A program made the translations under genes and the position numbers. From the IMG/VR virus record IMGVR_UViG_3300028864_000014, positions 171,319 to 235,318 of that record: 64,000 nt of DNA; one strand, written 5' to 3'. Below, piece after piece: positions 24,174-62,683 of the stretch (the first letter of the stretch is position 1; each line of letters begins with the position of its first letter). The notes beneath the pieces were generated by a model that saw nothing but the letters and a program-made list of their open reading frames with translations, did not search any database and was not told where the DNA came from.

Positions 24174-26069
<1,896 letters not shown>

Positions 26070-37700: not shown

Positions 37701-38770
37701 TTTTTTCCTTCAACAGTTAAATATTGAGCACCATCAGATGGAGCATAATTAGTTGGAATTCCAACTACATTAGTTGCTGATATATTTGTTATTTTTGATC
37801 CATCTCCACTCATTGTACCACCACTTACAACTAAATTACAATCTACTATTACATATCCAGTACTATTAATAGGTTTTATTGCTTCATAATCTGCATGTCT
37901 TATTGACTTTAATGCATCGCCAACATTATCTATTGTTATATTTGGATTGACACTTATCATATAAGACGTCATTGTTTCAAAATCAGAATTTAAAGGTACT
38001 CTCCAACCATCTGGATTATTTTGTATTAATGTGTTAGCTGCAAATAAGCAATATATTCTACCGTATATAACATTTATATCATTTTGAGTATATCCACTAG
38101 GCATGGTAAAAGGTAAATTAAATATTGCATAATCTTCTATAATATTTTCAATTGGATATTCAGCATAAGCAGGATATTGAGTACTAGTATTATACCACCA
38201 ATCATGATCATCCAAAGTTACTAATGAAGTTGTTGCAGATGATGCATAATCATATCCATTTATAACTCTTAAATTTTCTCTAGTCCAAATTTGAGTACCA
38301 ATTTTAACACAACTATATACATTTCCGTCTATATCTGTGAATCCAGATGAAATTATTTCTCCATCAGATAATAATGTTTCACCTGAAGTCGCTTCACGAG
38401 TTAGTCTTATTGAAAATCCATTATATCCAGACCATTCATTATATGAAATAGTAGATAATTGATTATCTAAAAGTGCAGCATAAAATTTAGTAGATGTACT
38501 ACCTGGTGTTGAAGTTCCAAAATAAGTTGAAAATCCGTTATTAAAATAAACTCCTTGGTTTCCTCTAATACCTGCTGTTACAGCGTCAAAATTATAATAA
38601 TCTTTTCCATATATATTATAATCCCCACTATACCACCAAAGAGGAAATTCAGTTGTAGTTCCAATAGTTGGTGGTACTTTTTCCCAATAACTTGCAGAAC
38701 TACTTCCAGTTAATCCGCTTTCAAATCCTCTAACCCATTCCTGACTAGCTAAATATATTATTTCACTCAT
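34763..38770 (-). CDS. large mosaic fibre/adhesin: LASxEWV tag, Fib_succ_major (FISUMP)-like region, three repeated beta-helix modules
   Basis: YLASQEWV; FTDIDGNVYSCVKIGTQIWTRENL..YGRIY..GWRVP; AP(S/T)xGxQYLTV..NGxELQxVY..IIIYPGYY x3; FINCxAG repeats. Confidence 0.8.
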   Translation of the reverse strand: MSEIIYLASQEWVRGFESGLTGSSSASYWEKVPPTIGTTTEFPLWWYSGDYNIYGKDYYNFDAVTAGIRGNQGVYFNNGFSTYFGTSTPGSTSTKFYAALLDNQLSTISYNEWSGYNGFSIRLTREATSGETLLSDGEIISSGFTDIDGNVYSCVKIGTQIWTRENLRVINGYDYASSATTSLVTLDDHDWWYNTSTQYPAYAEYPIENIIEDYAIFNLPFTMPSGYTQNDINVIYGRIYCLFAANTLIQNNPDGWRVPLNSDFETMTSYMISVNPNITIDNVGDALKSIRHADYEAIKPINSTGYVIVDCNLVVSGGTMSGDGSKITNISATNVVGIPTNYAPSDGAQYLTVEGKNVDSGINGEELQTVYDLAKSINPSSNNPINIIIYPGYYGMSNGLSLDTPYINLISATGELDVKIEFAGAIVISDNIKLTGIFFGGSGLKLTGNFPGLWIENCSGMIDGGNILTYPDTNLSGTFKDINLVNGNGFGYIQEASGYFENIYHKGGNLFYDTKIISGIFKNCNAANGFGVGGAVISSGATFENCTCDDAGFGGGGGCIISSGTTFINCNSGDNSFGNSGIEVSGTFINCNAGNSSFGAHCMTSGTFVNCTAKGNTGSFGDSKQGGTLTGSLYNCRLTTPGTFGLPSSGGTILLCIDGYGAVIGAGDFAPSDGNQYLTVKGISSDPGTNGAELQNVYNIAKALNPTIISPINIIIYPGYYGMTSLISLDTPYINLISSTGELDIEIGYSGILIITDNIKLIGINFTGMGLEIRGNFPGLRIENCSGQIKGSTIDNSTILSGTFKNLKLTNNTFGSGVSDFPGHFENITSDGALFNGENGDLSGRFINCTAETGFSSTSLSGTFINCNSGDFSFGTNEVGANVSGTFINCTAGNTSFGIDGIASGTFINCTAKSKSFGDSTRGGALTGSLYNCRLTTPGTFEIPSSGGTIILCIDGYGKIIGGGDFAPTIGTQFLTVKGGNSNPGINGNELQNVYNIAKAIVPAPDSPVNIIIYPGYYSFLTDSLNLDTQNINLVSSTGNIDVNIGGSGVIITNNKIKINGINFIDGGLKLTGNFPELYIENCSGQIQADTTNGDVTASGTFKNINITMGSGFSGIFNCSGIFKNIFSSNNLPLFSSSIDTLSGTFTDVNSVLIFQVNNLTGTFLNCKGNNGSFNGICSGTFTNCEGLSSSFTTINGGTYNNCVGQFVEISGGKLYYCKKNDGSYPTPINGGEIHLCIDGNGITVDSSIIPQSLSLSKIGANSTPSPQRFQWITDKTISRVLLTTNCSGVTVSISDITYDEITLVGVTLPALTDLVILDIAIQTGYDNANAIIIF

Positions 38771-39937: not shown

Positions 39938-40354
39938 TTAAATGTTTTTAATTGCTACTGCATAAATTTCAAAAGCAGTTTCTGTAAATACCTGTTCATA
40001 AACAATTGTCCAAGTAGAATTGATTCCTAAAATAGGAATATTTCCACGCCAAACAACTCCAGTCGGTTGATAAATTGTAGGTACTGAGCTTCCTGTTTTG
40101 AATATTAAAATTGATTCATTAACTAACCCATTTGCTGGAGTAGGAAGAATAACAGTTATTGTGTTTCCACTCGATATTGTTCCAATATATGTTTCAGTCC
40201 AATTATCTAAATTTAAATTTCCAGTAGGAGAATTTATTTTTTTATATTTATATACAGTATTGATTGTGACTCCACTACCAATTGCAACAGTTAATCCACT
40301 GAAAATATCACTAACCCATTCTTCACTTGCTAAATGTATTATATCTGAAGCCAT
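39938..40354 (-). CDS. short fibre-associated protein with LASEEWV tag
   Basis: IHLASEEWV; GVVWRGNIP..WTIVY. Confidence 0.7.
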   Translation of the reverse strand: MASDIIHLASEEWVSDIFSGLTVAIGSGVTINTVYKYKKINSPTGNLNLDNWTETYIGTISSGNTITVILPTPANGLVNESILIFKTGSSVPTIYQPTGVVWRGNIPILGINSTWTIVYEQVFTETAFEIYAVAIKNI

Positions 40355-40763: not shown

Positions 40764-40793
40764 AAACTCAATTAACTATTATTAACTGAGTTT
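40764..40793 (-). terminator. ACTCAGTTAA-class palindrome (copy 1)
   Basis: Single mismatch is G-U only in minus-strand RNA, matching gene direction. Confidence 0.75.
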
Positions 40794-40811: not shown

Positions 40812-43469
40812 TTATAAATTTGCATCTACAATAACCATTTTATCATAAATTAATTTTTGCTCTCCGTTTGAATTAACAAATAATTCTTTTGTGTAAGTAT
40901 TATAAATATACGTTGATGATGTTAAATCTAAATTAAAATAATTAAAATTGTCACATACAGTATTCATATTAAAATTACTACCAATTATAATATTTTGAAA
41001 ACTACTACCAATTGTGTTATTATTAAAACTATCACCAATAGTATTCTCAGAAAAATTACTACCAACAATATTATTCTTAAAATCTTCTCCAACTGTATTA
41101 GATTGAGAATAATTATTAATAGTATTATTTTTAAAATTATTTCCTACTGTAAATTCACAGCCACTACCGAATGTATTATATTGAAAATTGTCTAATGTTG
41201 TTAAATTACATTGACTTCCAATTGTATTATTTTGAAAATTACTACCGATTGTAAAATTGCATTGTCCAACAAATGTATTATTATAACAATTATCAGAAAT
41301 AGAACCGTTAATCTGACTACCAAAATTATTATTTGAAAATTGACTTCCTATTGTCAAATTACATTGATTTCCAAATACATTATCATAACAATTATCTCCA
41401 ATTGACAAATTACATTGACTACCAAATATATTATTAGAAAATCCTGATCCTCCTAATGACAAATTACATGAACTATTAAAAATATTATTGGAATAATTAT
41501 CACCTAGATTACATTTAGCCTGACTACCAAATGTATTATAACTAAAATAATTACCTAAAATACTATCTACAATAATTCCACCAAATATATTATACTGACA
41601 ATAATTTCCAATTTTGTTACGCACAAAATTGTTTTCAATTGTATTATTCCAAAAATCAGTACCAATTGTATCAAATTGACAATAATTTTTAAATGTATTA
41701 TATTTACTATTATTGCCTATATTAATCGTATTACATTGAATACCAAATATATTACCTTGTCCATTTAATATAGTAATATTTGAAGAGTTGCTTCCAATTG
41801 AATTATTAAAGCAACTACCAGAAAATATATTAAAGCTACATTGATATTCAATAACATTATTACTACAATTACCATCAAATGTATTATTCATACTATAACT
41901 TTCAATCGTATTATTAACATTATTAATACCAAATGTGTTACGAGAACATGAGTTTTTAATGATATTACTATTATTACCATTTCCAAATATATTATTACTG
42001 CACATGTTGCCTATTATATTATCATGAAAACTATTTCCTATTGTATTATATTGACAATCATGATCAATAATATTATCTTTACTATCATTACCAATTATAT
42101 TATAACTAAACTGGTGATTAATATTATTTTGATAAAAAGTAGTTCCAATTGTATTATTATAAAATGAATCTCCAATTGTATTATTATTAAAATTAGTATC
42201 TGTGGTATTATTACGATACTCATTTTTTATATTATTATATTGAAAATAATCTCTGTTTTTATTACTACCAAAATTATTTCCAATTATATTATCTGAAAAA
42301 TAGCTTTTGATATTATTATCTCCAAAATAATTTCCAGTTGTATTTGATACAAAATAATATCCAATACTATTATTTTGAAAACTTTTTCCAATATTATTAA
42401 AAATAAAATTATAGCTAATACTATTCTGATTGAAACTATTTTCTATTGTATTATTTTGAAAATCCATACCAATATTATTATTATAATATTGATTTATAAT
42501 ATTATTAAAAATAAAATTATTTCCAATAATATTATCAAAAATATAATCACCAATATTATTATTTTGAAAAAAATCACCAACACTATTATTATTAAAATAA
42601 TTTCCAATTATATTATTTTGAAAATAACCACCTATGCTATTATTAATAAAATTATTTCCAATAATTTTATTATATTGAAAATAACTTCCAAAAATTATAG
42701 TATTTTTATTGCTTATAATATCACCATTATTGGTATTACTATTATGTTGTTCTATCTTATTAGAATGAGAATAATTATAATTATTAATATCAGACCACAT
42801 ATTATAGTCAGTGTAACCTGTACTACATGAAATGTTTGAATTCCCAATGCTCCATACATTTTCAGTTGGACTCACATAAGACAAGTTATTCCATTTAAAT
42901 TGATTCCAATTATATGAAAAATTATTATCTCCAATAGTATTATTATATAAACAAATATAAATTGATCCATTGTATAAAACAACATCATTTTTTTGATATG
43001 TTGTTCCTGAATTCCAAACATTATTTACAATTATCTGCCATCTTCTAAATTTAACTTGTCTAAAATCAAATGATATATCATTATCTTGAATCGTATCTAT
43101 TCTTCTATAAATATATCCATATTGACAGCCAGGTACCATATTAGAATCATTTCTATAATTATAATATATTATATCCTGAGGATATAAACTTGAATGAGCC
43201 TCAACATTTAATGTATTAAAACTACTTGATATTACCAATAACGGTTCATTTATACCGTAATTAATATCACTTGTGTTTGTTATCTGATGTACTGTTTGAT
43301 AATCAGTAATCAAATATGCTTGGTTAGGAATTAAACTATTCGAGTTAATTAAATTTAGTAAATCATTATAAGTTAAATCTATAACTGATGTTCCGCCAGA
43401 ACCTCCACCTGTGGATCCAGTCAATTGACTATTAACCCACTCTTCACTAGCTAATTGAATATTTATCAT
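40812..43469 (-). CDS. Family F beta-solenoid fibre/adhesin (F5, 885 aa)
   Basis: MINIQLASEEWV; [43 protein letters not shown]; dozens of 9-11 aa NxIGxxF repeats; YTKELFV..YDKMVIVDANL. Confidence 0.8.
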   Translation of the reverse strand: MINIQLASEEWVNSQLTGSTGGGSGGTSVIDLTYNDLLNLINSNSLIPNQAYLITDYQTVHQITNTSDINYGINEPLLVISSSFNTLNVEAHSSLYPQDIIYYNYRNDSNMVPGCQYGYIYRRIDTIQDNDISFDFRQVKFRRWQIIVNNVWNSGTTYQKNDVVLYNGSIYICLYNNTIGDNNFSYNWNQFKWNNLSYVSPTENVWSIGNSNISCSTGYTDYNMWSDINNYNYSHSNKIEQHNSNTNNGDIISNKNTIIFGSYFQYNKIIGNNFINNSIGGYFQNNIIGNYFNNNSVGDFFQNNNIGDYIFDNIIGNNFIFNNIINQYYNNNIGMDFQNNTIENSFNQNSISYNFIFNNIGKSFQNNSIGYYFVSNTTGNYFGDNNIKSYFSDNIIGNNFGSNKNRDYFQYNNIKNEYRNNTTDTNFNNNTIGDSFYNNTIGTTFYQNNINHQFSYNIIGNDSKDNIIDHDCQYNTIGNSFHDNIIGNMCSNNIFGNGNNSNIIKNSCSRNTFGINNVNNTIESYSMNNTFDGNCSNNVIEYQCSFNIFSGSCFNNSIGSNSSNITILNGQGNIFGIQCNTINIGNNSKYNTFKNYCQFDTIGTDFWNNTIENNFVRNKIGNYCQYNIFGGIIVDSILGNYFSYNTFGSQAKCNLGDNYSNNIFNSSCNLSLGGSGFSNNIFGSQCNLSIGDNCYDNVFGNQCNLTIGSQFSNNNFGSQINGSISDNCYNNTFVGQCNFTIGSNFQNNTIGSQCNLTTLDNFQYNTFGSGCEFTVGNNFKNNTINNYSQSNTVGEDFKNNIVGSNFSENTIGDSFNNNTIGSSFQNIIIGSNFNMNTVCDNFNYFNLDLTSSTYIYNTYTKELFVNSNGEQKLIYDKMVIVDANL

Positions 43470-43594
43470 ATATTAAAAAATTATTTATTCTATATATTAA
43501 AAATTAGAAATAAAAATAATTTTTTAAGAAGATTTAACTATTGATAATTGTCAATTTTTTAAAAGGAGTTTATGGTATAAATATATATACTTAT

Positions 43595-45492: not shown

Positions 45493-46266
<774 letters not shown>

Positions 46267-46267
<1 letters not shown>

Positions 46268-46677: not shown

Positions 46678-47065
46678 AAAAGATTTATATGATTGGTTCT
46701 GGAATAAATATAATTCCTGCTATCAAGTTAAAGTAGAATTATATCCAGATAGTGTATTCTTAGTTTATGACGAAAAATATATAAGAAAACTTAAATTGTT
46801 TAAATTAAATAATACAGAAGAGTTAATTTCAATTAATAATGTTGAAGGAACATTTTTATTTAATCAGGATAATAAATTTAGAATTTTATGGCTGAGTGAA
46901 GAATTGTGGAAGTTCTTTGAAAAAAACTATTCATATGACTACTATGATATTCAAAAACTAATAAAAAAACTACTAAAAGATCATCCAATTTTATTCGATT
47001 ATAATCCTTTACCTGGTATGATTAAAAATATATATGAAAATAGTATTATAAAATCAAGATTATAA
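46667..47065 (+). CDS. Family X paralog, array 4/13
   Basis: same motif set. Confidence 0.85.
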   Translation: MMYKKDLYDWFWNKYNSCYQVKVELYPDSVFLVYDEKYIRKLKLFKLNNTEELISINNVEGTFLFNQDNKFRILWLSEELWKFFEKNYSYDYYDIQKLIKKLLKDHPILFDYNPLPGMIKNIYENSIIKSRL

Positions 47066-47985
<920 letters not shown>

Positions 47986-47989
47986 TAAT

Positions 47990-50626
<2,637 letters not shown>

Positions 50627-50634
<8 letters not shown>

Positions 50635-51091
50635 AGAAGAATTATCAAATTGGTTGATTAGCAAAATTTTATATTGCTATCCAGTAGTAGATAAAGAATG
50701 GAATGATTACGTTTTTTATTTCTATGACGAACAATATATTAGAAAACTTAAATTGTTTAAGTTATATAATATAAAAATAACATCGCCAAATCAAGTTAAT
50801 GGAATATGCTTATTTAGTTTAAATATTAAATATAAAATTATTTACTTTCATTATGAATATGTTTGGAAATTCTTTGAAAATAATTATATAAATAATTATA
50901 TACAAATTGAAAAATTTATAACTGAAATTATAAATGATTATAAACAACTAAATAAGTATTCACCAAAAAAAAATTCACAAGGATTTAGATATCCTGAACT
51001 AATAAGAAGTAAGAAAAATTTAGAAATTAGAGAAGCTGATTGGTCATCTCTACTTCCAAGTTCATATAAAAAATTAATAGTATTGAAATAA
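50627..51091 (+). CDS. Family X paralog, array 13/13
   Basis: same motif set. Confidence 0.85.
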
Positions 51092-51121
51092 AAAAACTCA
51101 GTTAAATTAACTGAGTTTTTT
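51091..51121. terminator. ACTCAGTTAA-class palindrome (copy 2), bidirectional
   Basis: AAAAAACTCAGTTAA-a-TTAACTGAGTTTTTT between convergent genes. Confidence 0.85.
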
Positions 51122-51124
51122 ATT

Positions 51125-52870
51125 TTATGCATTTGCATTAACAATAGTATTTCTATCGTATGCTAACTTTTGAATCACAGATGAATCAACATATAAATCT
51201 TTTGTGTAACTATTATAAATATATGTAGATGCTGTAAAATCTGATAAATGATAATTGTTAATACCAACATCATAATTACCAATATTGAAATTATCACAAA
51301 CATTATTCATCTTAAAATTGCTACCAATTACATTACGATTAAACGCGTTACCAATAGTATTATAGCTAAAAACATTTCCAATGTTATTGATGTCAAATCC
51401 ATTTCCAATAGTATTAAATTGAAAATAATTCCCAATAATATTACCATTAAAATATCCACCAAAAGAATTTCCTGTATTATTATTTTGAAAATTAGAACCA
51501 ATCCTATTATTTTGCGAGCCATTTCCAATAGTATTACATAGAGCAGCATATCCAATACTATTATAACTAAAATATGATTCAATAGTATTACGAGAAAACG
51601 CTTCACCAATATAATTATGAATAAAATATTCTCCAATACTATTATAAAAAAACACATCTGAAATAGTATTATATTGAAACATGCTTCTTATTGTATTATT
51701 ATAAAAACTAGCTCCAATACTATTATTCATAATATTACTTTCAATTGTATTAAATGTAAAATTAACTCCGATACTATTGTGTTCAAAATTTCCTCCTATT
51801 GTATTATTAAAAAAACTAGCTCCAATACTATTATAACTAAAATATGATTCAATTGTATTGCAGTTAATATTATTTCCAAAAAATACAGTATTATTACAAT
51901 TAAGTATATCTCCATCTCCAATGTAATCTTGTTTTATTCTATTAGAATAAATTGTACTATCATATGTATTAAACATCAGATAATCAGTATATAAAGTGGA
52001 TGTTGGAATACTAAAATAAAGATACCAATTTGTTATATTTGGACTAGAATAACTTAAATTAGCCCATTCAAAACGTTTCCAAATAATTTGATTTGTTTGT
52101 GTTGATGGATTCACACCAATTACATTATCAATTAAACATATATAAATTTGTGTTGTCCCACTGATTAAAACAACATCACTTCTCATATATGTTGATCCTG
52201 AATTCCAAATGTTTGTAACATTCAATTGCCATCTTCTAAATTTTACTTGTCTGAAGTCAAATGGAATATCATTATTTTTTAATGTATCAACTCTTCTATA
52301 AATATATCCTTTTGCACATCCAGGCATCATACTTTGATTATTATTGAAATCATAATATATTATATCATTCGGATATAATCTTGAATACGTCTCAGGCTTT
52401 AATGTATTAACACTACTTGCAGTTACTAATAAAGGTTCTGTTGTTCCTGAATTTATAATAGTTGTTTCAGGTATTCTATGTATAGTTTGATAATCAGTAA
52501 TTAAATATGCTTGATTAGTAGTTAATCCACTATTATTAATTAATGTTACTAATCCACTATATGTGACATTTGTAACTGAATTTGTACCTCCACTAGAACT
52601 TATACTAATACCTGATGTTCCTGATGTACCATTTTGTCCAGAACTTCCATATCCAACTGAACCATTCTGTCCTGAAGTTCCTGACGTTCCTGAATTACCG
52701 GAACTTCCTGTGTTTCCAGTTGATCCATTCTGTCCAGATGTTCCAGATTTACCTGCTGTTCCACTAGTCCCATTTTGACCTGATGTACCAGAGGTGCCTG
52801 TTGATCCACCTGTTGTTCCAGATAATCTTCCTTCAACCCATTCTTCACTCGCTAACTGTATATTTACCAT
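51125..52870 (-). CDS. Family F beta-solenoid fibre/adhesin (F4)
   Basis: MVNIQLASEEWV, GTSG linker, core domain, NxIG repeats, conserved C-terminus. Confidence 0.8.
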   Translation of the reverse strand: MVNIQLASEEWVEGRLSGTTGGSTGTSGTSGQNGTSGTAGKSGTSGQNGSTGNTGSSGNSGTSGTSGQNGSVGYGSSGQNGTSGTSGISISSSGGTNSVTNVTYSGLVTLINNSGLTTNQAYLITDYQTIHRIPETTIINSGTTEPLLVTASSVNTLKPETYSRLYPNDIIYYDFNNNQSMMPGCAKGYIYRRVDTLKNNDIPFDFRQVKFRRWQLNVTNIWNSGSTYMRSDVVLISGTTQIYICLIDNVIGVNPSTQTNQIIWKRFEWANLSYSSPNITNWYLYFSIPTSTLYTDYLMFNTYDSTIYSNRIKQDYIGDGDILNCNNTVFFGNNINCNTIESYFSYNSIGASFFNNTIGGNFEHNSIGVNFTFNTIESNIMNNSIGASFYNNTIRSMFQYNTISDVFFYNSIGEYFIHNYIGEAFSRNTIESYFSYNSIGYAALCNTIGNGSQNNRIGSNFQNNNTGNSFGGYFNGNIIGNYFQFNTIGNGFDINNIGNVFSYNTIGNAFNRNVIGSNFKMNNVCDNFNIGNYDVGINNYHLSDFTASTYIYNSYTKDLYVDSSVIQKLAYDRNTIVNANA

Positions 52871-52908
52871 TAATTTTTTTTATTTGTATATATTAAAAAA
52901 CAATAAAT

Positions 52909-52939
52909 AAAAAACTCAGTTAAATTAACTGAGTTTTTT
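52909..52939. terminator. ACTCAGTTAA-class palindrome (copy 3)
   Basis: identical to copy 2. Confidence 0.85.
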
Positions 52940-52941
52940 TA

Positions 52942-53334
52942 TTAATTTCCTATGATTTTAAGTTTTATACTTTTTTTACATATCTCACAAAATACATTAA
53001 ATTGATTAAAAATTGCTTCATCTATTCCAGCTAATTTTTTTCGTTGAATTGCTAATTGCTGATCATATGTATATTCAGAATTAATAAGTCCTGATACTTG
53101 TGATTCATATGATAAAGAATCATATTCATATAATCCTTCTTGAATATAATCACCCATATCAGTGTAAATTTTCCAACCAGTACTTCCAGATGAAAATCTC
53201 AATTCTTTGTAACCATTTTCAATACATAAATCAGAATTGTTATTAAATCCAACTATTCCATCTTTACTTTTTGGTGCTTTTTCGATAGTAACTTTATCTA
53301 TCATTTTTACATACGTTCTTTTAAATATATTCAT
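52942..53334 (-). CDS. fibre-associated small protein / chaperone-like
   Basis: VSGLINSEYTYDQQLAIQR..FNQFNVFCEICK, pattern typical of tail-region proteins in Bacteroidota phages. Confidence 0.55.
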   Translation of the reverse strand: MNIFKRTYVKMIDKVTIEKAPKSKDGIVGFNNNSDLCIENGYKELRFSSGSTGWKIYTDMGDYIQEGLYEYDSLSYESQVSGLINSEYTYDQQLAIQRKKLAGIDEAIFNQFNVFCEICKKSIKLKIIGN

Positions 53335-53343
53335 AATTATTAT

Positions 53344-55305
53344 TTATTTTTGAAATTCATAAGCTCCAATATCAATAGTAGTTCCACTAATTCTATTATT
53401 TGATTTTACATCAAAAACAGATCCATAACCAGAAGTATTATCGCTATTTATTCCGTTGTCTATTAAAAAAGATTGTTCTGAAATATTAAGATTACAAACT
53501 AATACATCATCTACTACTCCTGAATTTAAAGATATTATATCAAAATAAGGACTATTAGTATCTCCACTATTATTAGTAGAAATTGATATATTTCCAATAC
53601 CTGGTCGTTCGTCATTTTCAAATGCAGAATATTCTTCAATACTTGAATTTGTATTAACTACATTATTTTGAGTTCCAGCTATTGATTTATTTCCCCAAAC
53701 TACAGTATTCTTTAATACACAGTTATTTGTACCACCTCCTGAATTTCTGACAACTGAACAATTTATAAGATTAGCAGATTCTGCTCCTCCAACTAGACTT
53801 GCTCCGTAGTTGTTAAAAATTGAGCATGATATTAATGTTCCACCACTTACTCCTCCTACATTACCATTTGAATAATTATTATATACAATTGAACTGATCA
53901 AATTTGAATTATATGATCCTGCTGAGTAACTTAAATAGTTAAGAGATTCATTAGAGTTAATAGAGCAATTTACTAAATTCGAAATAAAAAGTGTTGTTCC
54001 TTTAGCAGCAGTGCTAATGTTTTTATTTATATCAGAATTTGAAAATGATGATAAAAAACCTGCTGAAACACTTCCAACTGTAGAATTATTACTTATAAAG
54101 CAGTTCGTTAGTGATGAATTTATTGCTCCTGCTGATCCACTATATCCATATCGGTCTCCCATATCAGAATTAACTGTTCCAGTATTAACATTACTTGAAA
54201 TTATAGAATTACTAATTGATGAATTTATAACTCCTACTCCACCATTTATATTTCCAATTGATGAATTAAAAGATACTAAGCAGTTATTAAGATTTGCTCC
54301 ATAAACACCACTCCATGATGAATACCAGTAATCGTAAGATTCAATATTATTAATTATTTGACAATTTGATAATATTAATGTACCTGAAGAATGAATTCCT
54401 GCACATAAATATGGTATTGAGTCATTGAAAGAATCCGATATTTGAAATCCGTTTACAACTGATTTTATACCTGAACTACAATAAAGAGTAGTATATGAAG
54501 AAGTTATCTGAGAACCTAATAAATTACCAGACATTATACTTTTATTTTTTGGTACAGGAACAAATAAATCTATATTTCCAGATGGTAATCTTAATATTTC
54601 TTTGTAAGATACCATATCACGCTCATATAGAGAACTTTCAGTACCAATAAATCCTCCGAATATATTTATTCCAGTCTTAAGAAGAAATGATGCAGATCTG
54701 GCATCTCCAATTGTTCTTAATGTAGTAGGTAAATAAGTAATTCCACTTTCAGATCCTTTAACAAAAATTGCATCACCAGAATTTGACAAATCAATAGCTG
54801 TTTGAATATTCTTATACGAATTTGTCCATGATAATCCATCATTAGTATCTAATCCATTATCTCCATCAACATATCTTATAACTGAACCTATTATCTCAAA
54901 TCCATTTTCATCAATTCCAACAGTAGCGATATTTTTATAAATAAGTCCTAGCCTCCAAGTAATGCCATTATCTGATGATGACATTGTATACATATATTCA
55001 CCTACTTCTGTTGGATATTCTAAATTGTCAAATAAAAAATTATTTGGAAAACTTAATGACACATAATCGTTAAGTTTAATTTTTAAATATAATTGAACAT
55101 ATTTACTCATATCAACATTTCCTGTATTTACAGTTACTGTTAATCCTGACGCTGTTGATATATCATATACTTTAATATTCTTGTCTAATATAATAGAACC
55201 TGATACAACTTGTTCAGTGTTATATTGAATTGTGTTACCATCTGTTAAATTTCCTACTATATCAGTTACCCAGTTTTGATTAGCTAAATATATTATTTCA
55301 TCCAT
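53344..55305 (-). CDS. right-handed parallel beta-helix (pectin-lyase-like) tail spike/adhesin
   Basis: IYLANQNWV tag; YVDGDNGLDTNDGLSWTNSYKNIQTAID; GINIFGGFIGTE; terminal RISGTTIDIGAYEF (choice-of-anchor Q-like). Confidence 0.8.
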   Translation of the reverse strand: MDEIIYLANQNWVTDIVGNLTDGNTIQYNTEQVVSGSIILDKNIKVYDISTASGLTVTVNTGNVDMSKYVQLYLKIKLNDYVSLSFPNNFLFDNLEYPTEVGEYMYTMSSSDNGITWRLGLIYKNIATVGIDENGFEIIGSVIRYVDGDNGLDTNDGLSWTNSYKNIQTAIDLSNSGDAIFVKGSESGITYLPTTLRTIGDARSASFLLKTGINIFGGFIGTESSLYERDMVSYKEILRLPSGNIDLFVPVPKNKSIMSGNLLGSQITSSYTTLYCSSGIKSVVNGFQISDSFNDSIPYLCAGIHSSGTLILSNCQIINNIESYDYWYSSWSGVYGANLNNCLVSFNSSIGNINGGVGVINSSISNSIISSNVNTGTVNSDMGDRYGYSGSAGAINSSLTNCFISNNSTVGSVSAGFLSSFSNSDINKNISTAAKGTTLFISNLVNCSINSNESLNYLSYSAGSYNSNLISSIVYNNYSNGNVGGVSGGTLISCSIFNNYGASLVGGAESANLINCSVVRNSGGGTNNCVLKNTVVWGNKSIAGTQNNVVNTNSSIEEYSAFENDERPGIGNISISTNNSGDTNSPYFDIISLNSGVVDDVLVCNLNISEQSFLIDNGINSDNTSGYGSVFDVKSNNRISGTTIDIGAYEFQK

Positions 55306-55355
55306 TTATATTTTTATTTCTATATATAAATTAAATAAAATTAACAATTGAAAAT

Positions 55356-55391
55356 AAAAAACTCAGTTAAAATATTTTAACTGAGTTTTTT
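55356..55391. terminator. ACTCAGTTAA-class palindrome (copy 4), perfect 36 bp
   Basis: AAAAAACTCAGTTAAAAT|ATTTTAACTGAGTTTTTT. Confidence 0.85.
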
Positions 55392-55406
55392 TAGGTATTT
55401 TATGAG

Positions 55407-57197
55407 TTAAGCATTTGCACTCACAATAACAGTCTTATCATATATTAACTTTAACTGTGATGAAGAATTACTAAATATTTCTTTTGTATATGAATTATAA
55501 ACATAAGTAGATGATAAAAAATTTGTTCCAGTAACACCACATTGAATAAAATTGTGAGCAAAATTACTTCCTATTGTATTACCACTAAATGTCTCTATTA
55601 TTGAATTATTTGTAAAATAATTTCCTACTGTATTAATACCAAAATAATTTGATATTGAATTATGTCCAAAATCAGTTCCTATTATATTAGTACCAAATCC
55701 ACTTTTTATTGTATTATACATAAAATTAGTTCCTATTGTATTAGCACCAAAATTACTTCCTATTGAATTATATCCAAAATTAGTTCCTATTTTATTATTA
55801 CCAAAATTTCCTCCTATTACATTCAAAGAAGAATTGTTTCCTATCGTGTTAGTACCAAAATTTCCTCCTACCACATTTAAAGTGAAAGCGTTTCCTATTA
55901 TATTATATCCAAAATTGATATCTATAATATTATTAGTGAGTCCATATCCTATAAAATTAAATTGACAATTACGTTCAATTGAATTATAAGTAAAACTATC
56001 ACCTATTACATTAAAATTAAAACTATTTCCTATTGTATTATCAGAAAAACTTCCTCCTATTGAATTAATAGCGAAACTGTTTCCTAATTTATTTTTATTA
56101 AATGCATATGAAATAGAATTATTATAAAAACTATCTCCTATTGTATTAGTATTAAAACTATTTCCTATTGTGTTCTCATAAAAATTGTTTCCTATAGTAT
56201 TATTATAAAAACCAGATCCAAGTGTGACTGAATTATTGTTTGATATTATATTTGTTGATGACTGTTCAATTGAAATATTGAAACTCGATGAATAATCCCA
56301 AAACATATTATAATCTGTATATCCAGTCGAACATGGAATATTAACACTGAACAAAGCCCAACTATTTTTATATGGACTTGTGTAACTTAAATTACCCCAT
56401 TCAAATAATTTCCAAATTGAATCAATGGATGGATCAATTCCAGTCACAAGATTATTCATACAAATATAAATCTTAGTTGTTCCACCACTTAAAACAACAT
56501 CATTCTTATTGTATGTCGTACTATTATTCCAAATGTTAGTAACATTCAATTGAAATCTTCTGAACTTTACCTTTCTAAAATCAAAAGGTATGTCATTAAC
56601 CTGAATTGTGTCTATCCTTCTATAAATATATCCTTTAGTACAACCAGATACCATACTTTGATTATTAGTATAATTATAATAAATAATATCCTGAGGATAT
56701 AATGCTGAATATGCTTCTGGTTTTAATGAATTAATACCACTTGCTGTAACTAATAAAGGTTCTGTTGTTCCTGAACTTAACTCAGTTGTTTTAGGAATTA
56801 CATATACTGTCTGATAATCTGTTATTAAATATTGATTACCTATTGTTAATCCATTTGAAGATATTAAATTAGATAAACTATTATATGTCAAATTTGTAAC
56901 TGTACTTGTACTTCCACTAGGAGAATTACCAGATGTTCCAGATGTTCCTGAACCTGATGTACCAGAAGTTCCTGAATTTCCAGCAGATCCATTCTGTCCT
57001 GAAGTTCCTGACGTTCCTGAATTACCAGAACTTCCTGTGTTTCCAGTTGATCCATTCTGTCCAGATGTGCCTGATCTACCTGCTGTTCCACTAGTTCCAT
57101 TTTGACCTGATGTACCAGACGTACCTGTTGATCCACCTGTTGTTCCAGATAACCTTCCTTCAACCCATTCTTCACTCACCAATTGAATATTTATCAT
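55407..57197 (-). CDS. Family F beta-solenoid fibre/adhesin (F3)
   Basis: MINIQLVSEEWV; first ~190 bp nearly identical to F4. Confidence 0.8.
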   Translation of the reverse strand: MINIQLVSEEWVEGRLSGTTGGSTGTSGTSGQNGTSGTAGRSGTSGQNGSTGNTGSSGNSGTSGTSGQNGSAGNSGTSGTSGSGTSGTSGNSPSGSTSTVTNLTYNSLSNLISSNGLTIGNQYLITDYQTVYVIPKTTELSSGTTEPLLVTASGINSLKPEAYSALYPQDIIYYNYTNNQSMVSGCTKGYIYRRIDTIQVNDIPFDFRKVKFRRFQLNVTNIWNNSTTYNKNDVVLSGGTTKIYICMNNLVTGIDPSIDSIWKLFEWGNLSYTSPYKNSWALFSVNIPCSTGYTDYNMFWDYSSSFNISIEQSSTNIISNNNSVTLGSGFYNNTIGNNFYENTIGNSFNTNTIGDSFYNNSISYAFNKNKLGNSFAINSIGGSFSDNTIGNSFNFNVIGDSFTYNSIERNCQFNFIGYGLTNNIIDINFGYNIIGNAFTLNVVGGNFGTNTIGNNSSLNVIGGNFGNNKIGTNFGYNSIGSNFGANTIGTNFMYNTIKSGFGTNIIGTDFGHNSISNYFGINTVGNYFTNNSIIETFSGNTIGSNFAHNFIQCGVTGTNFLSSTYVYNSYTKEIFSNSSSQLKLIYDKTVIVSANA

Positions 57198-57249
57198 AGT
57201 TAATTTTATTTCTATATATAAATTAAACTAACTGATTAAACAATAAATA

Positions 57250-57278
57250 AAAAACTCAGTTAAATTAACTGAGTTTTT
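57250..57278. terminator. ACTCAGTTAA-class palindrome (copy 5)
   Basis: with flank CAATAAAT, 38 bp identical to copy 3 region. Confidence 0.85.
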
Positions 57279-57296
57279 AATTTTTTATAAATCTAA

Positions 57297-58874
57297 TTAT
57301 TCAATGACATCTACTATTGTTGTCACATCATATACTAACTTGTTAAGCCCTGTTGAATCAACATATAAGTTTTTAGTATAGGCTAAATAGATATATGTTG
57401 ATGATGATAAATCTAATCCAGATCCAAAATTATCACATATATTGTTCATAGTAAAATTACTTCCAATTGTATTAGTATTAAAGTTACTTCCAATTGAATT
57501 ATTTTGAAAGTTACTTCCAATTGAATTATAATTAAAATCACTTACAATTGTATTACCACTAAAAATACTTTCAATAGAATTATTATTAAAATTACTTCCA
57601 ATTGCATTTCTTTCAAATCCATATCCAATTGAAGTATTAGTATTAAAATCACTTCCAATTGAATTTTTTTGAAAGTTACTTAATATAGTATTATATTGAA
57701 AGTTGCTTCCTATATTATTATATTGATAATAATTATCCACACTATTAAAATTGAAATTATTTGAAATTGTATTATAGTTGAAATTTGCGCCAATTGTATC
57801 ATTATTGGAAAATAGACTTCCAATTGAATTATTATTAAAATTATTTCCAATATTAGAGTTGGAACTAAAATCTGCTCCAATTAAATTATTATAAAAACTA
57901 CTTGCAATATTATTACTAGTAAAATTACCTCCAATTATATTATTGTAAAAATTATTTGAAATTGTATTATAGTTGAAATTATTTGAAATTGTATTACCAC
58001 TAAAATTAATATCAATATTATTATTTTGAAAATATGATTCAATATTATTAGAGTTAAAATTATCTCCTATGTTGTCATTTTTATTAAAATCACTTCCAAT
58101 TATATTATTGTAAAAATTATTTGAAATTGTATTATGGTAAAAATTATTTGAAATTGTATTACCACTAAAAAATTTTCCAATTGAATTATACATAAAGTAA
58201 TTTTCAATACTATTATCATTAAAATTGTCTCCTATTGTATTACCTGAAAAACCAGTTCCTATTTTATTATTCTTAAAATTGCTTCCTATTGTATTACTAT
58301 TAAAACCATCTCCTATTGTATTATCACGAAAATTACTTCCTAAAATTATAGAATTATTTTGATCTATTCTATAATTTAGTGCTCCTATTTTATTATTAAA
58401 AGCAGTTGAATAATCAACAAAAAAATTATAAACTGTAACTCCACTACTTATATAATTATTTACAATCTTAAAATTTCTAAAATCAAAAGGCATATCATTA
58501 TTCTGTATTGTATCTATCCTTCTATAAATATATCCTTTAGTAGAACCATGTATAACATTAGTATTATTATTGAAATCATAATATATAATATCCTTAGGAT
58601 ATAATGCTGAATATGCTTCTGGTTTTAATGTATTAACTCCACTAGCTGTTACTAATAAAGGTTCAATTATACCAGTGAAAGTATTTCCATAATATGCATC
58701 AATATAAATAGTCTGATAATCTGTAATCAAATACTGACTTCCAATTGTTAATACACTATTATTAATCAAATCGCCCAATTCATTATATGTAACATTAGTT
58801 ACTGAAGAACCACCAGTACCTCCGCCTAATTGTCCTTCAACCCACTCTTCACTTGCTAATTGTATATTTATCAT
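57297..58874 (-). CDS. Family F beta-solenoid fibre/adhesin (F2)
   Basis: MINIQLASEEWV; core lacks the RRWQ insert; very regular 9-aa repeats. Confidence 0.8.
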   Translation of the reverse strand: MINIQLASEEWVEGQLGGGTGGSSVTNVTYNELGDLINNSVLTIGSQYLITDYQTIYIDAYYGNTFTGIIEPLLVTASGVNTLKPEAYSALYPKDIIYYDFNNNTNVIHGSTKGYIYRRIDTIQNNDMPFDFRNFKIVNNYISSGVTVYNFFVDYSTAFNNKIGALNYRIDQNNSIILGSNFRDNTIGDGFNSNTIGSNFKNNKIGTGFSGNTIGDNFNDNSIENYFMYNSIGKFFSGNTISNNFYHNTISNNFYNNIIGSDFNKNDNIGDNFNSNNIESYFQNNNIDINFSGNTISNNFNYNTISNNFYNNIIGGNFTSNNIASSFYNNLIGADFSSNSNIGNNFNNNSIGSLFSNNDTIGANFNYNTISNNFNFNSVDNYYQYNNIGSNFQYNTILSNFQKNSIGSDFNTNTSIGYGFERNAIGSNFNNNSIESIFSGNTIVSDFNYNSIGSNFQNNSIGSNFNTNTIGSNFTMNNICDNFGSGLDLSSSTYIYLAYTKNLYVDSTGLNKLVYDVTTIVDVIE

Positions 58875-58910
58875 TTATCATTTTATTTCTATATATAAAT
58901 TAACAAACTA

Positions 58911-58944
58911 AAAAACTCAGTTAAATTATTTTAACTGAGTTTTT
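58911..58944. terminator. ACTCAGTTAA-class palindrome (copy 6)
   Basis: AAAAACTCAGTTAA-attatt-TTAACTGAGTTTTT. Confidence 0.85.
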
Positions 58945-58946
58945 GT

Positions 58947-59561
58947 TTAATTAATATCAGATGTTATATTTAACGATTGATCAAATATTCCCTCACAATA
59001 CATATACTTATTGTCCAATTTTATAATATATAAAATACTATCAATATTTAAATCAGATGATGCAAAATCCTTTATACATTTAAAAGATTCTTTATGAATA
59101 GCATAACTATGAGTGAATAATTTACCTGGAATTTTTTCAATTCCTTTATGTACTTTATCTCTGAATATTCCTTTAATGATATTATTCTCCTTCCTGAATT
59201 GTATCATATTATCAAAATAAAATAAATTCCAATTATTGTTCTTTAAAAAATTAAAACAAATATCTAAATGATAATCTAATTTTTTTTCAATCTCTATGTT
59301 ATCCTGATTAAAACAAACATCATCCTCAAATATAAATATCTTATCATAATCATTTTCTATAGCATCATCTATACAACTAATATGAGATGATTTACAAGAT
59401 TTAGTAGAACTAATATCATCAGTGATAGGAACAATTTTCTTATATTTAGTTATATTTAATATTCTAAACATATTCATTATGTTATCATATCTATCAGTCC
59501 TAATTGGTAAATTTATAAAATATACCATATCAAAATATTCAAAATAATTATGCAGTAGCAT
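58947..59561 (-). CDS. glycosyltransferase family 25
   Basis: VYFINLPIRTDR, SCKSSH, IFIFEDD, WNLFY, THSYAI, IFDQ..SDI. Confidence 0.85.
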   Translation of the reverse strand: MLLHNYFEYFDMVYFINLPIRTDRYDNIMNMFRILNITKYKKIVPITDDISSTKSCKSSHISCIDDAIENDYDKIFIFEDDVCFNQDNIEIEKKLDYHLDICFNFLKNNNWNLFYFDNMIQFRKENNIIKGIFRDKVHKGIEKIPGKLFTHSYAIHKESFKCIKDFASSDLNIDSILYIIKLDNKYMYCEGIFDQSLNITSDIN

Positions 59562-61074
59562 CTACTATTGTTACTTTATCATAAATTAATTTTCTTTGAC
59601 CTGATGAATTAACAAATAAATCTTTAGAATATTGATTATAAACATGAGTGGATGATGTGAAATTTAATCCACTATGATCAAAATTAAAATAATCACAAAC
59701 ATTATTCATTGTAAAATTGCTTCCAATTGTATTACTATTAAAATAACTTCCAATTGTATTATATTGAAAATTACTTCCAATTGTATTACTATTAAAATAA
59801 CTTTCTATACTATTATTTTGAAAATACATTATAATATTATTAAATGTAAATACATTTTCAATCGTATTATTTTGAAAATTACTTCCGATAGTATTATAAT
59901 AAAAATTACCAAAAATAGTATTATTATTAAATAAACTTCCTATACTATTATTTTGAAAAGCATTTCCAATTGTATTATACTGAAAATTATTCAAAATTGT
60001 ATTCCAATTAATCATACCTCCAATTGTATTAAATCTAAAATTTATTCCAATAATATTACTGTCAAAATAATCATCTATTGAATTATTTTGAAAAAAATCA
60101 TCTAATAAATTATCAGAAAAATTGTTTTTTATTGAATTATTATTAAATCCAAAACCAATCAAATTATTGAAAAAATATGAACCTATTTTATTAAAACTAA
60201 ATGAATTAAAAATAGTATTGTTGAAAAAATATGAACCTATTTTATTGTTATTAAATTGATAACCAAATATTACATTATTTGAATATGTAATCATATCTGA
60301 TCCATATATATTTGACATAGGAATTAAAAATTGTTTATCTATAATATTATTAAAACTAGTATTATAATCATTCCAATTACTCCACATATTATAATCTGTA
60401 TAACCAGTAGAACAAGGTAAATATAAAGCATTAAACTGATATCCTACACTTGTCGTACTTACATATGATTTGTTACTTATCATATAAAATGTATTCCAAT
60501 AATTAGTATTACTTAACTGATTACCTGTATTTCCACTTACTATACTAACATACAGAATATTATTTGTATTACCGCTTAAAACAACATTATTACGATTATA
60601 TGTTGTTCCAGAATTCCAAACTTCACTAACATTTATTTGCCATCTTCTAAACTTAACATTCCTAAAATCAAAAGGAATATCATTGTTCTGTGCAGTATCT
60701 ATCCTTCTATAAATGTAACCTTTAGTACATCCAATTACCATAGTCTGATCACTATAGTAATTATAGTAAATTATATCCTGAGGAAATAAACTTGAATATG
60801 CCTCAGGCTTTAATTTATTAACTCCACTTGCTGTAACTAATAAAGGTTCTGTCATTCCACTATTTATATCAGTTGTATTAGGTATCTTATGTACTGTTTG
60901 ATAATCAGTAATTAAATATTGTCCACCAATAGTTAAATTATTAGTATTAATTAATGATGTTAATTCATTATATGTAACATCAGTTACTGAATTTGTGTTG
61001 CCTGTTGATCCACCAGTACCTCCGCCAAACTGTTCCTCAACCCATTCTTCACTTGCTAATTGTATATTTATCAT
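59548..61074 (-). CDS. Family F beta-solenoid fibre/adhesin (F1)
   Basis: MINIQLASEEWV; core, repeats and C-terminus as other F genes. Confidence 0.8.
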   Translation of the reverse strand: MINIQLASEEWVEEQFGGGTGGSTGNTNSVTDVTYNELTSLINTNNLTIGGQYLITDYQTVHKIPNTTDINSGMTEPLLVTASGVNKLKPEAYSSLFPQDIIYYNYYSDQTMVIGCTKGYIYRRIDTAQNNDIPFDFRNVKFRRWQINVSEVWNSGTTYNRNNVVLSGNTNNILYVSIVSGNTGNQLSNTNYWNTFYMISNKSYVSTTSVGYQFNALYLPCSTGYTDYNMWSNWNDYNTSFNNIIDKQFLIPMSNIYGSDMITYSNNVIFGYQFNNNKIGSYFFNNTIFNSFSFNKIGSYFFNNLIGFGFNNNSIKNNFSDNLLDDFFQNNSIDDYFDSNIIGINFRFNTIGGMINWNTILNNFQYNTIGNAFQNNSIGSLFNNNTIFGNFYYNTIGSNFQNNTIENVFTFNNIIMYFQNNSIESYFNSNTIGSNFQYNTIGSYFNSNTIGSNFTMNNVCDYFNFDHSGLNFTSSTHVYNQYSKDLFVNSSGQRKLIYDKVTIVDATA

Positions 61075-61088
61075 TTATTATTTTTATT

Positions 61089-61100
61089 TCTATATATAAA
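61089..61100 (-). promoter_or_regulatory. putative late promoter TTWATATATA(G/C) (representative copy)
   Basis: TATATA core also at 26088, ~28697, 40718, 43491, 52887, 55321, 57213, 58890, 61405, each shortly upstream of a minus-strand ATG. Confidence 0.7.
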
Positions 61101-61118: not shown

Positions 61119-61198
61119 AGCCTAATCAATTAGAGACGCGTTCCCCAAAAGTCATCAATTACACTCAAGCCTAATCAATTAGAGACGCGTTCCCCAAA
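61119..61198. repeat. exact 31-bp direct repeat x2, 18-bp spacer
   Basis: AGCCTAATCAATTAGAGACGCGTTCCCCAAA at 61119-49 and 61168-98. Confidence 0.95.
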
Positions 61199-61307: not shown

Positions 61308-61391
61308 TTAACCTACTACAATAGGATCATCTCCAGGTGAAGTTCCCTTAAATGCCTTAGTAGTCGTACTGGTTGTGATAATGTCTTCCAT
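61308..61391 (-). CDS. 27-aa peptide behind late promoter
   Basis: MEDIITTSTTTKAFKGTSPGDDPIVVG*; TTTATATATAGA ~14 nt upstream. Confidence 0.45.
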   Translation of the reverse strand: MEDIITTSTTTKAFKGTSPGDDPIVVG

Positions 61392-61490
61392 ATTACTTTT
61401 CTTCTATATATAAAAAAACCTTCTATTATACTTCAGATAATTTTTTTATTCCAAAATTTTTTATTACCTTTATAACTTAAATATAATTGT

Positions 61491-62683
<1,193 letters not shown>

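What the first reader, a model, noticed from the sequence alone, without database searches (positions are those of the whole stretch)
51091..61100. Fibre genes built as repeating cassettes: late promoter - LASEEWV ORF - identical palindrome
Seen: five consecutive units (F1+GT25, F2, F3, spike+chaperone, F4) and a sixth at 40764-43500. Each starts with TTWATATATA(G/C) and ends with the same ACTCAGTTAA..TTAACTGAGT palindrome. Junction DNA is shared (38 bp identical at 52901 and 57241; F3/F4 5' ends nearly identical for ~190 bp; F1/F2 promoter-to-N-terminus nearly identical). Inference: self-contained receptor-binding cassettes that can be gained, lost or chimerised by recombination, giving a multi-adhesin virion or switchable tropism without invertase or RT. 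The G-U-compatible mismatch in copy 1 argues the palindromes act at least as terminators.
Basis: partly seen in the sequence, partly recalled or inferred. Interest (0 to 1): 0.8.

Follow-up and report, generated by a model that had tools for sequence, protein, structure and literature searches.

The report
Phage fibre genes as separate transcription units
An uncultured peat-bog jumbo phage carries many related tail-fibre genes, each with its own late-promoter-like motif and a near-identical terminator hairpin; relatives carry different gene sets, but nothing suggests a programmed host-range switch.

Summary
Six units on the minus strand each start at TTWATATATA(G/C) 15-25 nt before the ATG. 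Each ends in A-run/ACTCAGTTAA/loop/TTAACTGAGT/T-run. This palindrome occurs nowhere else in the window, and no further exact copy occurs in the rest of the 235-kb contig.

The hairpins behave as RNA intrinsic terminators. They fold at -14 to -17 kcal/mol. One copy has a G-U wobble that pairs only on the sense strand. A relative carries a compensatory stem change.

The genes are old paralogues (45-55% amino-acid identity) of an unnamed fibre family with 1,825 clusters in metagenomes and no solved structure. They are built from a 12-residue N-terminal docking peptide, an optional collagen tract, a conserved globular domain, 9-residue repeats and a conserved C-terminus. The same body also occurs behind a T4 gp9/10-type N-terminus. 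The same peptide heads a beta-helix spike and other proteins.

A related phage has a different gene set at the same locus. Homology there breaks just after the shared peptide codons.

About 20 same-strain contigs keep the gene order. They differ only by in-frame repeat indels.

My reading is ordinary monocistronic late units whose conserved junctions could serve recombination, as PeSL cassettes do in T4-type phages. Evolutionary cassette turnover is supported. Switchable tropism is not.

The parts
59548..61074 (-). F1, 508 aa. It has docking peptide MINIQLASEEWV, the conserved globular domain, about 13 nonapeptide repeats and the conserved C-terminus.
   Evidence: AF2 model
58947..59561 (-). 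GT25 glycosyltransferase, 204 aa. It overlaps the F1 stop by 14 nt and sits in the same unit.
   Evidence: Pfam PF01755, E 5e-8; the same pairing occurs in relatives
57297..58874 (-). F2, 525 aa. It lacks part of the globular domain. A 497-aa allele exists in the population.
55407..57197 (-). F3, 596 aa, with a collagen-like G-X-Y tract after the peptide. A 575-aa allele exists.
53344..55305 (-). Spike, 653 aa, predicted as a right-handed parallel beta-helix. Its N-terminus is the diverged docking peptide MDEIIYLANQNWV.
52942..53334 (-). 130-aa ORF in the same unit as the spike. Function unknown; 'chaperone' is unverified.
   Evidence: no hit in Pfam or PHROGs
51125..52870 (-). F4, 581 aa. Its 5' module (peptide plus collagen tract) is about 95% identical to that of F3.
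40812..43469 (-). F6, 885 aa. Same family, with more repeats and a CBM_5_12 match.
58911..58944 (-). Terminator hairpin after GT25, loop AATAAT
   Evidence: -15.6 kcal/mol, z -6.1
57250..57278 (-). Terminator hairpin after F2
   Evidence: -14.7 kcal/mol
55356..55391 (-). Terminator hairpin after F3
   Evidence: -17.0 kcal/mol
52909..52939 (-). Terminator hairpin after the spike plus 130-aa unit
   Evidence: -14.4 kcal/mol
51091..51121 (.). Terminator hairpin after F4. It lies between convergent genes, so it would serve both strands.
40764..40793 (-). Terminator hairpin after F6. Its single mismatch is a G-U wobble on the sense strand only.
   Evidence: -15.1 kcal/mol (sense) against -8.2 (antisense)
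61090..61100 (-). Late-promoter-like motif TTTATATATAG before F1
58889..58899 (-). The same motif before F2
57212..57222 (-). The same motif before F3
55320..55330 (-). The same motif before the spike
52886..52896 (-). Motif TTAATATATAC before F4
43490..43500 (-). Motif TTAATATATAG before F6
24174..26066 (-). 630-aa member of the same body family. It has the other N-terminus ([23 protein letters not shown]4 gp9/10-type), its own motif at 26087, and a different terminator stem (AGAGAGCAAAT) at 24135-24170 and 26122-26154.
34763..38770 (-). 1335-aa protein that starts with the same docking peptide (MSEIIYLASQEWV) and has a Fib_succ_major domain
39938..40354 (-). 138-aa protein that starts with the same docking peptide (MASDIIHLASEEWV)

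Best explanation
The window is the end of a jumbo phage contig of at least 235 kb from peat metagenomes, at about 23% G+C. It encodes a large paralogous family of fibre-like virion proteins.

**Transcription units (hairpin shown; promoter and termination inferred).** Each gene, or gene pair, is its own late transcription unit. A TATATATA-type late-promoter-like motif sits 15-25 nt before the ATG, with no Shine-Dalgarno sequence. A factor-independent RNA hairpin terminator closes the unit and insulates it from the next. The likely effect is that each fibre species is made in its own amount.

**Protein architecture (modules shown; attachment inferred).** The proteins are modular. They have a 12-residue N-terminal docking peptide, M-x-NIQLASEEWV. 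An alternative N-terminus is of the T4 gp9/10 type. An optional collagen-like stalk follows, then a conserved 200-residue globular domain. Next come 7-27 nonapeptide (N-x-I-G-x-x-F-x-x) beta-solenoid repeats, then a conserved C-terminal knob. The shared peptide most likely docks many different fibres and spikes onto one kind of site on the baseplate or on a gp10-like anchor protein. That would give a multi-fibre virion.

**Evolution (turnover shown; mechanism inferred).** The composite junction is about 100-130 bp. It comprises the terminator stem, the late-promoter-like motif and the peptide codons, and it is the only DNA shared by otherwise old paralogues. I infer that it serves as the homology for recombination. 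That recombination duplicates, deletes, replaces and chimerises whole cassettes over evolutionary time and keeps the terminator stems alike. It is not a programmed switch.
For: **Architecture and statistics.**

**RNA-level hairpin.**
- Stability is -14 to -17 kcal/mol with z about -6.
- The F6 copy pairs on the sense strand only.
- The copy after GT25 in the relative has a compensatory G-C to U-A change plus a wobble.

**Stem conservation.** Thirteen copies in three genomes have stem arms 96-98% identical. Their loops differ, and their flanks are at background (39-41% against 32% for random 20-mers).

**Age of the paralogues.** The tree is star-like. Only F1 has a clear orthologue in the relative, at 84/90 support.

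**Modularity.**
- Two N-termini occur on the same body.
- The peptide occurs on 8 window proteins, including a beta-helix spike.
- PF07880 (T4_gp9_10_N) scores above its cut-off in paralogues P0005 and P0006.

**Cassette turnover.**
- The relative L015 has, at the syntenic place, 283-aa, 300-aa, 441-aa, 400-aa+GT25 and 811-aa genes, not the window's set.
- Homology at 83% runs through GT25, the terminator, the promoter-like motif and the first 35 nt of the next gene. The best matches to the rest of that gene then fall to 62-75% and lie elsewhere in L015.

**Intragenomic exchange.** F3 and F4 share a 41-nt junction and about 215 nt of 5' coding sequence at about 95% identity.

**Fibre identity.** tblastn hits fall in a Clostridium phage 'tail fiber protein' and in PAU gp99.

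**Precedents.** PeSL terminator/promoter cassettes (PMC2839356, PMC4122927) and anchor plus conserved-peptide RBP systems (PMC6872550).
Against: - No transcript data exist; no RNA run was listed. Promoter activity, its 'late' timing and termination are all inferred.
- Recombination at the junctions is inferred from one genome-pair breakpoint and from mosaic paralogues. No recombinant junction or mini-circle was seen. The reads were low-depth contigs only, and their joints were unreliable.
- Not every fibre gene in the relative has its own promoter and terminator. The 283/300-aa and 441/400-aa pairs are 13-19 nt apart.
- The variable part of the F proteins is the repeat number, not the tip. Multiple receptor specificities are therefore unproven.
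- Virion location is not shown.
Confidence: 0.7

Rival explanations
1. The invariant stem is a sequence-specific signal, not just a terminator. Under this reading it is a common 3' tag on fibre mRNAs, or a hairpin in DNA, that a phage factor recognises for coordinated processing, stability, translation or recombination.
For: - The stem arms are 96-98% identical in 13 copies, while loops and flanks vary freely.
- Other late genes use other stems.
- In IMG/VR the exact palindrome is confined to this small phage clade, apart from one unrelated 41%-G+C contig (L111). Wherever I read the context, it directly follows a fibre or spike gene.
- Variable arm spacing (1-6 nt) fits recognition of a hairpin rather than of duplex DNA.
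Against: - The orthologous copy after GT25 has drifted with compensation in the relative, so the exact sequence is dispensable there.
- Two other stem families also recur at unrelated loci. That points to a general habit of re-using terminators.
- No candidate binding protein was identified.
Confidence: 0.12
2. This is pure vertical inheritance. The unit was duplicated long ago with its terminator, and purifying selection alone has frozen the stems. The junctions play no part in recombination.
For: - With only 3 G-C pairs per stem, any single change weakens the hairpin, so selection should be strong.
- The flanks are at background, as expected if no conversion tracts extend outward.
Against: - The orthologous copy shows that stems can change.
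- Loop types cluster by locus: three TTAATT loops in L030 and three T loops in the window.
- A 41-nt junction is identical between two cassettes, and the three L030 junctions are near-identical across terminator, promoter motif and gene start.
- The homology breakpoint lies at the junction and peptide codons.
Confidence: 0.13
3. This is a programmed tropism switch. Cassettes would be rearranged or alternately expressed within a population to change host range.
For: Only the repeated junctions, which could in principle support rearrangement.
Against: - Order and content are identical in all same-strain contigs from many samples.
- No invertase, reverse transcriptase or template/variable repeat pair was found among the ORFs scanned.
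- All units have the same promoter-like motif, and all read in one direction.
Confidence: 0.03

Closest known systems
PeSL (promoter-early stem-loop) regulatory cassettes of T4-type phages (Arbiol et al. 2010, PMC2839356; Comeau et al. 2014, PMC4122927)
   Same: - Both are short composite intergenic motifs made of a terminator stem-loop plus a promoter.
- Both are repeated many times in the plastic parts of the genome.
- Both flank genes that differ between relatives.
- In both, the motif brings promoter and terminator along with the gene, and about 100 bp of conserved sequence is proposed as the recombination substrate.
   Different: - Here the promoter-like motif is TATATATA-type, placed close to the ATG of structural genes. 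It is not a sigma-70 early promoter in front of ORFans.
- The homology continues in frame into the codons of an N-terminal docking peptide.
- The host phage is an unrelated, uncultured jumbo phage.
- Mini-circles and promoter or terminator activity were shown experimentally for PeSLs. Neither is shown here.
Branched multi-RBP systems: an anchor protein with a T4gp10-like domain plus secondary RBPs attached by a short conserved N-terminal peptide (Latka et al. 2019, PMC6872550; K1-5/SP6, G7C, Menlow, PhiK64-1/RaK2, PhiKp24)
   Same: - There are many fibre or spike genes in clusters.
- A short conserved N-terminal peptide heads otherwise different proteins, one of them a beta-helix spike.
- Other members carry a T4 gp9/10-type N-terminus.
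- The phage is a jumbo phage.
   Different: - The bodies are mostly one unnamed paralogous family with nonapeptide repeats and a conserved C-terminus. They are not a set of different depolymerases.
- Attachment and specificities are untested.
- The peptide sequence is unrelated to the published ones.
Intrinsic (factor-independent) bidirectional terminators
   Same: The hairpins have an A-run, a stem with 3 G-C pairs, a short loop and a T-run. They lie right after a stop codon, and pairing is kept by wobble and compensatory changes.
   Different: The stem sequence is almost invariant in 13 copies behind genes that are only about 50% identical.

Membership tests
Intrinsic terminator | Stable stem-loop followed by a U-run, just downstream of a stop codon | tested here: met
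   All six copies meet this; -14 to -17 kcal/mol with z about -6
Intrinsic terminator | Pairing kept at the RNA level (wobble or compensatory changes) | tested here: met
   The F6 copy has G-U on the sense strand only. The L015 copy has one compensatory pair plus a wobble
Intrinsic terminator | Transcripts end at the U-run | not testable with these tools
   No RNA run was listed
PeSL-type regulatory cassette | Composite terminator stem-loop plus promoter within about 100 bp, repeated many times | tested here: met
   Five terminator/promoter-motif junctions in the window and three in L030
PeSL-type regulatory cassette | The promoter is a sigma-70-like early promoter | tested here: not met
   The motif is TTWATATATAS with no -35/-10 pair. 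The sigma-70 scan is at background (208 found against 207 expected)
PeSL-type regulatory cassette | Gene-content differences between relatives are bounded by the motif | tested here: inconclusive
   One genome pair: the 83% homology ends 35 nt into the next gene, after the junction. There are too few genomes to generalise.
PeSL-type regulatory cassette | Excised mini-circles or junction recombinants | not testable with these tools
   Only low-depth short contigs were available, and their joints were unreliable
Branched multi-RBP system | Several RBP-like genes share a short conserved N-terminal peptide | tested here: met
   Eight window proteins carry [IVLY][QYH]LA[SN]xxWV at residues 4-6, and more do in relatives
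Branched multi-RBP system | An anchor protein with a T4 gp9/gp10-like domain | tested here: inconclusive
   PF07880 scores 26.6 and 29.8 bits (cut-off 25) in paralogues P0006 and P0005. P0005 belongs to this phage but lies just outside the window. The window's 630-aa copy has nearly the same N-terminus but no significant Pfam hit.
Branched multi-RBP system | Physical attachment of the proteins to the tail, and distinct receptor specificities | not testable with these tools
   No isolate, no proteome
Programmed tropism switch (invertase or DGR) | A recombinase or reverse transcriptase, and alternative arrangements within one population | tested here: not met
   No such domain in the ORFs scanned. 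Order is identical in same-strain contigs.

The most novel reading that the evidence does not exclude
The terminator/late-promoter/docking-peptide junction could be a late-gene counterpart of PeSLs. Under this reading it is a portable, in-frame recombination module. Co-infecting jumbo phages would use it to swap whole receptor-binding cassettes without breaking expression or virion attachment. The near-invariant stem would be kept alike by that ongoing exchange, or by a dedicated factor that reads it.
Probability: 0.35. Interest if true: 0.55.

Novelty: new variant of a known kind. Interest (0 to 1): 0.4.

Why it matters
- **Host-range evolution.** The locus shows how a large uncultured phage organises at least 15 fibre-like genes. 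Each can be tuned separately and exchanged as a unit. That bears on how host range evolves and on modular phage engineering.
- **An unstudied fibre domain.** The conserved globular domain has 1,825 clusters at 50% identity, no Pfam family and no solved structure or fold match. It is a good target for structural work.
- **A testable oddity.** The near-invariant terminator stem behind anciently diverged genes is small but can be tested directly.

Tried and rejected
- **Alternative genetic codes.** No gain in ORF coverage except the trivial TAA case.
- **Synonymous-site test for gene conversion.** Uninformative: identical amino acids use identical codons 60-90% of the time everywhere, because of the extreme A+T bias.
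- **Near-identical DNA in isolated phages.** None.
- **Rfam.** No match in 40-64 kb.
- **Fold and structure searches with F1 and its family alignment.** No PDB match: Foldseek with the F1 model gave E >= 0.7, and the family-alignment (A3) profile found nothing. BFVD gave only one local match to an unnamed 1048-aa viral protein.
- **Reads.** Only peat DNA runs kept as short contigs were available, and no RNA run was listed. The joints came from paralogues or relatives, with short sides.
- **Palindrome in 241 million metagenome records.** Hits outside the clade have other flanks and G+C content and are unrelated.
- **Small flanking ORF family.** No match anywhere.
- **Giant eukaryotic virus** (the 'hairpin rule', collagen, low G+C). 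This idea was dropped. IMG/VR files the contig as a viral genome, PF07880 matches the T4 gp9/10 N-terminus, and the only matches among isolates are phage proteins, one annotated as a tail fibre.


Full report
**What the window is.**
- The window matches letter for letter the last 64 kb of IMG/VR contig IMGVR_UViG_3300028864_000014 (235,318 bp).
- The same phage is present in many peat metagenomes.
- G+C is about 23%. The standard genetic code fits, and there are no tRNA genes.
- Longer contigs of 242 kb (this phage) and 326 kb (the relative's lineage) exist.

**Check of the observation.**
- On the minus strand lie these genes:
  - F1 (59548-61074), with an overlapping GT25 gene (58947-59561);
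  - F2 (57297-58874);
  - F3 (55407-57197);
  - a 653-aa spike (53344-55305), followed by a 130-aa ORF;
  - F4 (51125-52870);
  - F6 (40812-43469), further away.
- Each unit is followed within 6-25 nt by A-run/ACTCAGTTAA/loop/TTAACTGAGT/T-run. There are five exact copies against none expected, plus one copy with a single mismatch. There are no further copies in the window.
- Each unit is preceded by TTWATATATA(G/C). This has nine sites against 2.55 expected, all on the minus strand and all 15-25 nt before an ATG. Three of the nine precede other genes, so the motif is a general one.
- The leaders read GAAATAAAA and lack a Shine-Dalgarno sequence.
- The shared junction DNA is real. It is 41 identical nt at 57238-57278 and 52898-52938. 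F3 and F4 share about 215 coding nt at about 95%, against roughly 55-80% further on. F1 and F2 are about 93% identical from the motif to codon 22.

**The palindromes are RNA terminators.**
- They fold at -14 to -17 kcal/mol with z about -6.
- The mismatch in the F6 copy is a G-U wobble on the sense strand. That strand folds at -15.1 kcal/mol, against -8.2 for the antisense strand.
- In the relative, the orthologous copy after GT25 reads ACTCATTTAA..TTAGATGAGT. That is one compensatory pair and one wobble.
- The F4 copy lies between convergent genes.
- Other late genes in the window end in the same kind of hairpin but with other stems. These are AGAGAGCAAAT at 24135 and 26122, AGAGTAGATTT at 28727 and AGAGAGATAA at 27608. 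Those stems also recur at other loci and in relatives, once with a compensatory change.

**Where the palindrome occurs.**
- In the whole of IMG/VR, the exact ACTCAGTTAA palindrome occurs in a small clade of peat phages and in one unrelated 41%-G+C contig (L111).
- In the 235-kb contig it occurs only at the five window sites.
- Hits elsewhere in 241 million metagenome records have other flanks and are unrelated.

**The unexpected point.**
- Thirteen sense-strand copies from three genomes have stem arms 96-98% identical.
- Their loops differ (T, TTAA, TTAATT, AATAAT, AATATT, TAATAG, AATTAA).
- Their flanks are at background, 39-41% against 32% for random 20-mers.
- Yet the genes in front of them are old paralogues. 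They share 45-55% amino-acid identity and form a star-like tree in which only F1 has a clear orthologue in the relative.
- The orthologous copy after GT25 has drifted, so the identity among paralogous copies is best read as homogenisation over the short shared core. A sequence-specific role is not excluded.

**The proteins.**
- F1-F4 and F6 share these modules:
  - the docking peptide M-x-NIQLASEEWV;
  - an optional collagen-like tract (F3, F4; Pfam Collagen);
  - a conserved globular domain;
  - a variable number of 27-nt/9-residue repeats, N-x-I-G-x-x-F-x-x;
  - a conserved C-terminal stretch of about 40 residues.
- The AF2 model of F1 has mean pLDDT 76. The globular domain (residues 30-230) scores above 90 over most of its length, and the repeats model as regular short beta-strands.
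- The model has no significant PDB match, and an alignment profile finds no solved relative.
- The globular domain alone finds 1,825 clusters at 50% identity, 945 of them at E <= 1e-10. It occurs at various positions in proteins of up to 1,760 aa.
- Among isolates it occurs in Sphingomonas phage PAU gp99, in a Clostridium phage 'tail fiber protein' and in a 636-kb uncultured phage.
- The same body also occurs behind another N-terminus, [21 protein letters not shown]. This N-terminus reaches the Pfam cut-off for T4_gp9_10_N in two paralogues. It heads the window's 630-aa gene at 24174-26066.
- Conversely, the docking peptide heads eight window proteins. These include the spike, which looks like a right-handed beta-helix, a 1335-aa Fib_succ_major protein and a 138-aa protein.
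- Counting the DNA just beyond the window end (L001, L030) and two other loci of the same phage, there are at least 15 such genes.
- This matches the published 'anchor plus conserved peptide' layout of multi-RBP phages (PMC6872550).

**Relatives and population.**
- A related genome is contig Ga0302284_1000004, about 70-83% DNA identity in shared parts.
- It has the same flanks: the GC-rich motif on one side and the small-ORF array on the other.
- Its fibre set is different. It reads 283-aa and 300-aa Fib_succ_major proteins, palindrome, 441-aa, 400-aa+GT25, variant palindrome, 811-aa, palindrome.
- Homology at 83% runs through GT25, the terminator, the promoter-like motif and the first 35 nt of the next gene. 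It then stops.
- Two gene pairs in the relative lack a junction of their own.
- Within the window's own strain, the contigs keep the same order. The differences are:
  - a 63-bp collagen indel in F3;
  - a further collagen-length variant seen in reads;
  - an 84-bp repeat indel in F2;
  - a loop and spacer indel after GT25.
- No cassette-level variant was seen. The available reads were low-depth contigs, though, and no RNA run was listed.

**Interpretation.**
- Shown: the architecture, the RNA-level hairpins, the modular proteins, the difference in cassette set between relatives, and the mosaic F3/F4 5' module.
- Inferred: that the motif is a late promoter, that the hairpins terminate, that the proteins sit on the virion through the shared peptide, and that the junctions are the recombination substrate.
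- The closest described system for the junctions is the PeSL cassette of T4-type phages (PMC2839356, PMC4122927). This case differs in promoter type, in flanking structural genes, and in the homology running in frame into the docking peptide.
- A programmed tropism switch is not supported.

Noticed in passing
window 61129-61144 and 61178-61193 (minus strand); L015 6683-6730; L030 2234-2249: A GC-rich motif, GGAAYGCGTCTCTAAT (about 30 nt conserved in the window copies), stands twice 30-80 nt upstream of the F1 promoter-like motif. It recurs upstream of the first TAATATATA motif of fibre-containing gene blocks in the relative and in the neighbouring cluster. It could be a regulator site or a block-level promoter.
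   Followed up: partly
window 45493-51091 (+) and 61491-62683 (+); also L015, L030, L096, L103: An array of more than 14 small paralogous ORFs (116-218 aa, N-terminus M-x-KEEL-x-x-WF-x-x-KFN-x-CYP) flanks the fibre clusters in every related genome. It has no match in Pfam or the ESM Atlas.
   Followed up: partly
window 58947-59561; L009 11799-12431; L015 11190-11804; L037 8981-9619; L046 11850-12488: A GT25 glycosyltransferase gene overlaps the stop of an F-body gene in five contexts that have different N-termini. This is a conserved gene pair and may mean that the fibre is glycosylated.
   Followed up: partly
window 24135-24170, 26122-26154, 27608-27635, 28727-28757; L009 12433; L034 6506; L046 12493; L060 5454, 5885: The genome re-uses a small set of terminator stems at unrelated loci (AGAGAGCAAAT, AGAGTAGATTT, AGAGAGATAA). 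They are conserved in relatives, once with a compensatory change.
   Followed up: partly
window 61310-61390 (minus strand): A tiny 26-codon ORF has its own TTTATATATAG motif at 61404-61414, between the small-ORF genes and the GC-rich motif.
   Followed up: no
L006 6818-8545; L121; window 56975-57097: Population variants are in-frame repeat-length changes: F3 at 575 against 596 aa (collagen tract) and F2 at 497 against 525 aa (nonapeptide repeats).
   Followed up: yes
L113, L118, L124, L126, L133, L139, L146, L149, L152, L154, L160, L164, L167: An unrelated, longer palindrome family contains the same 10-mer arms (for example TTTATGGT-ACTCAGTTAA-NNNN-TTAACTGAGT-ACCATAAA). It recurs in contigs of about 32-38% G+C from other environments.
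   Followed up: no
window 14749-15660 and 4251-5033 (+): The plus-strand half of the window encodes a radical SAM protein and an HD-domain protein among many short unknown ORFs.
   Followed up: no
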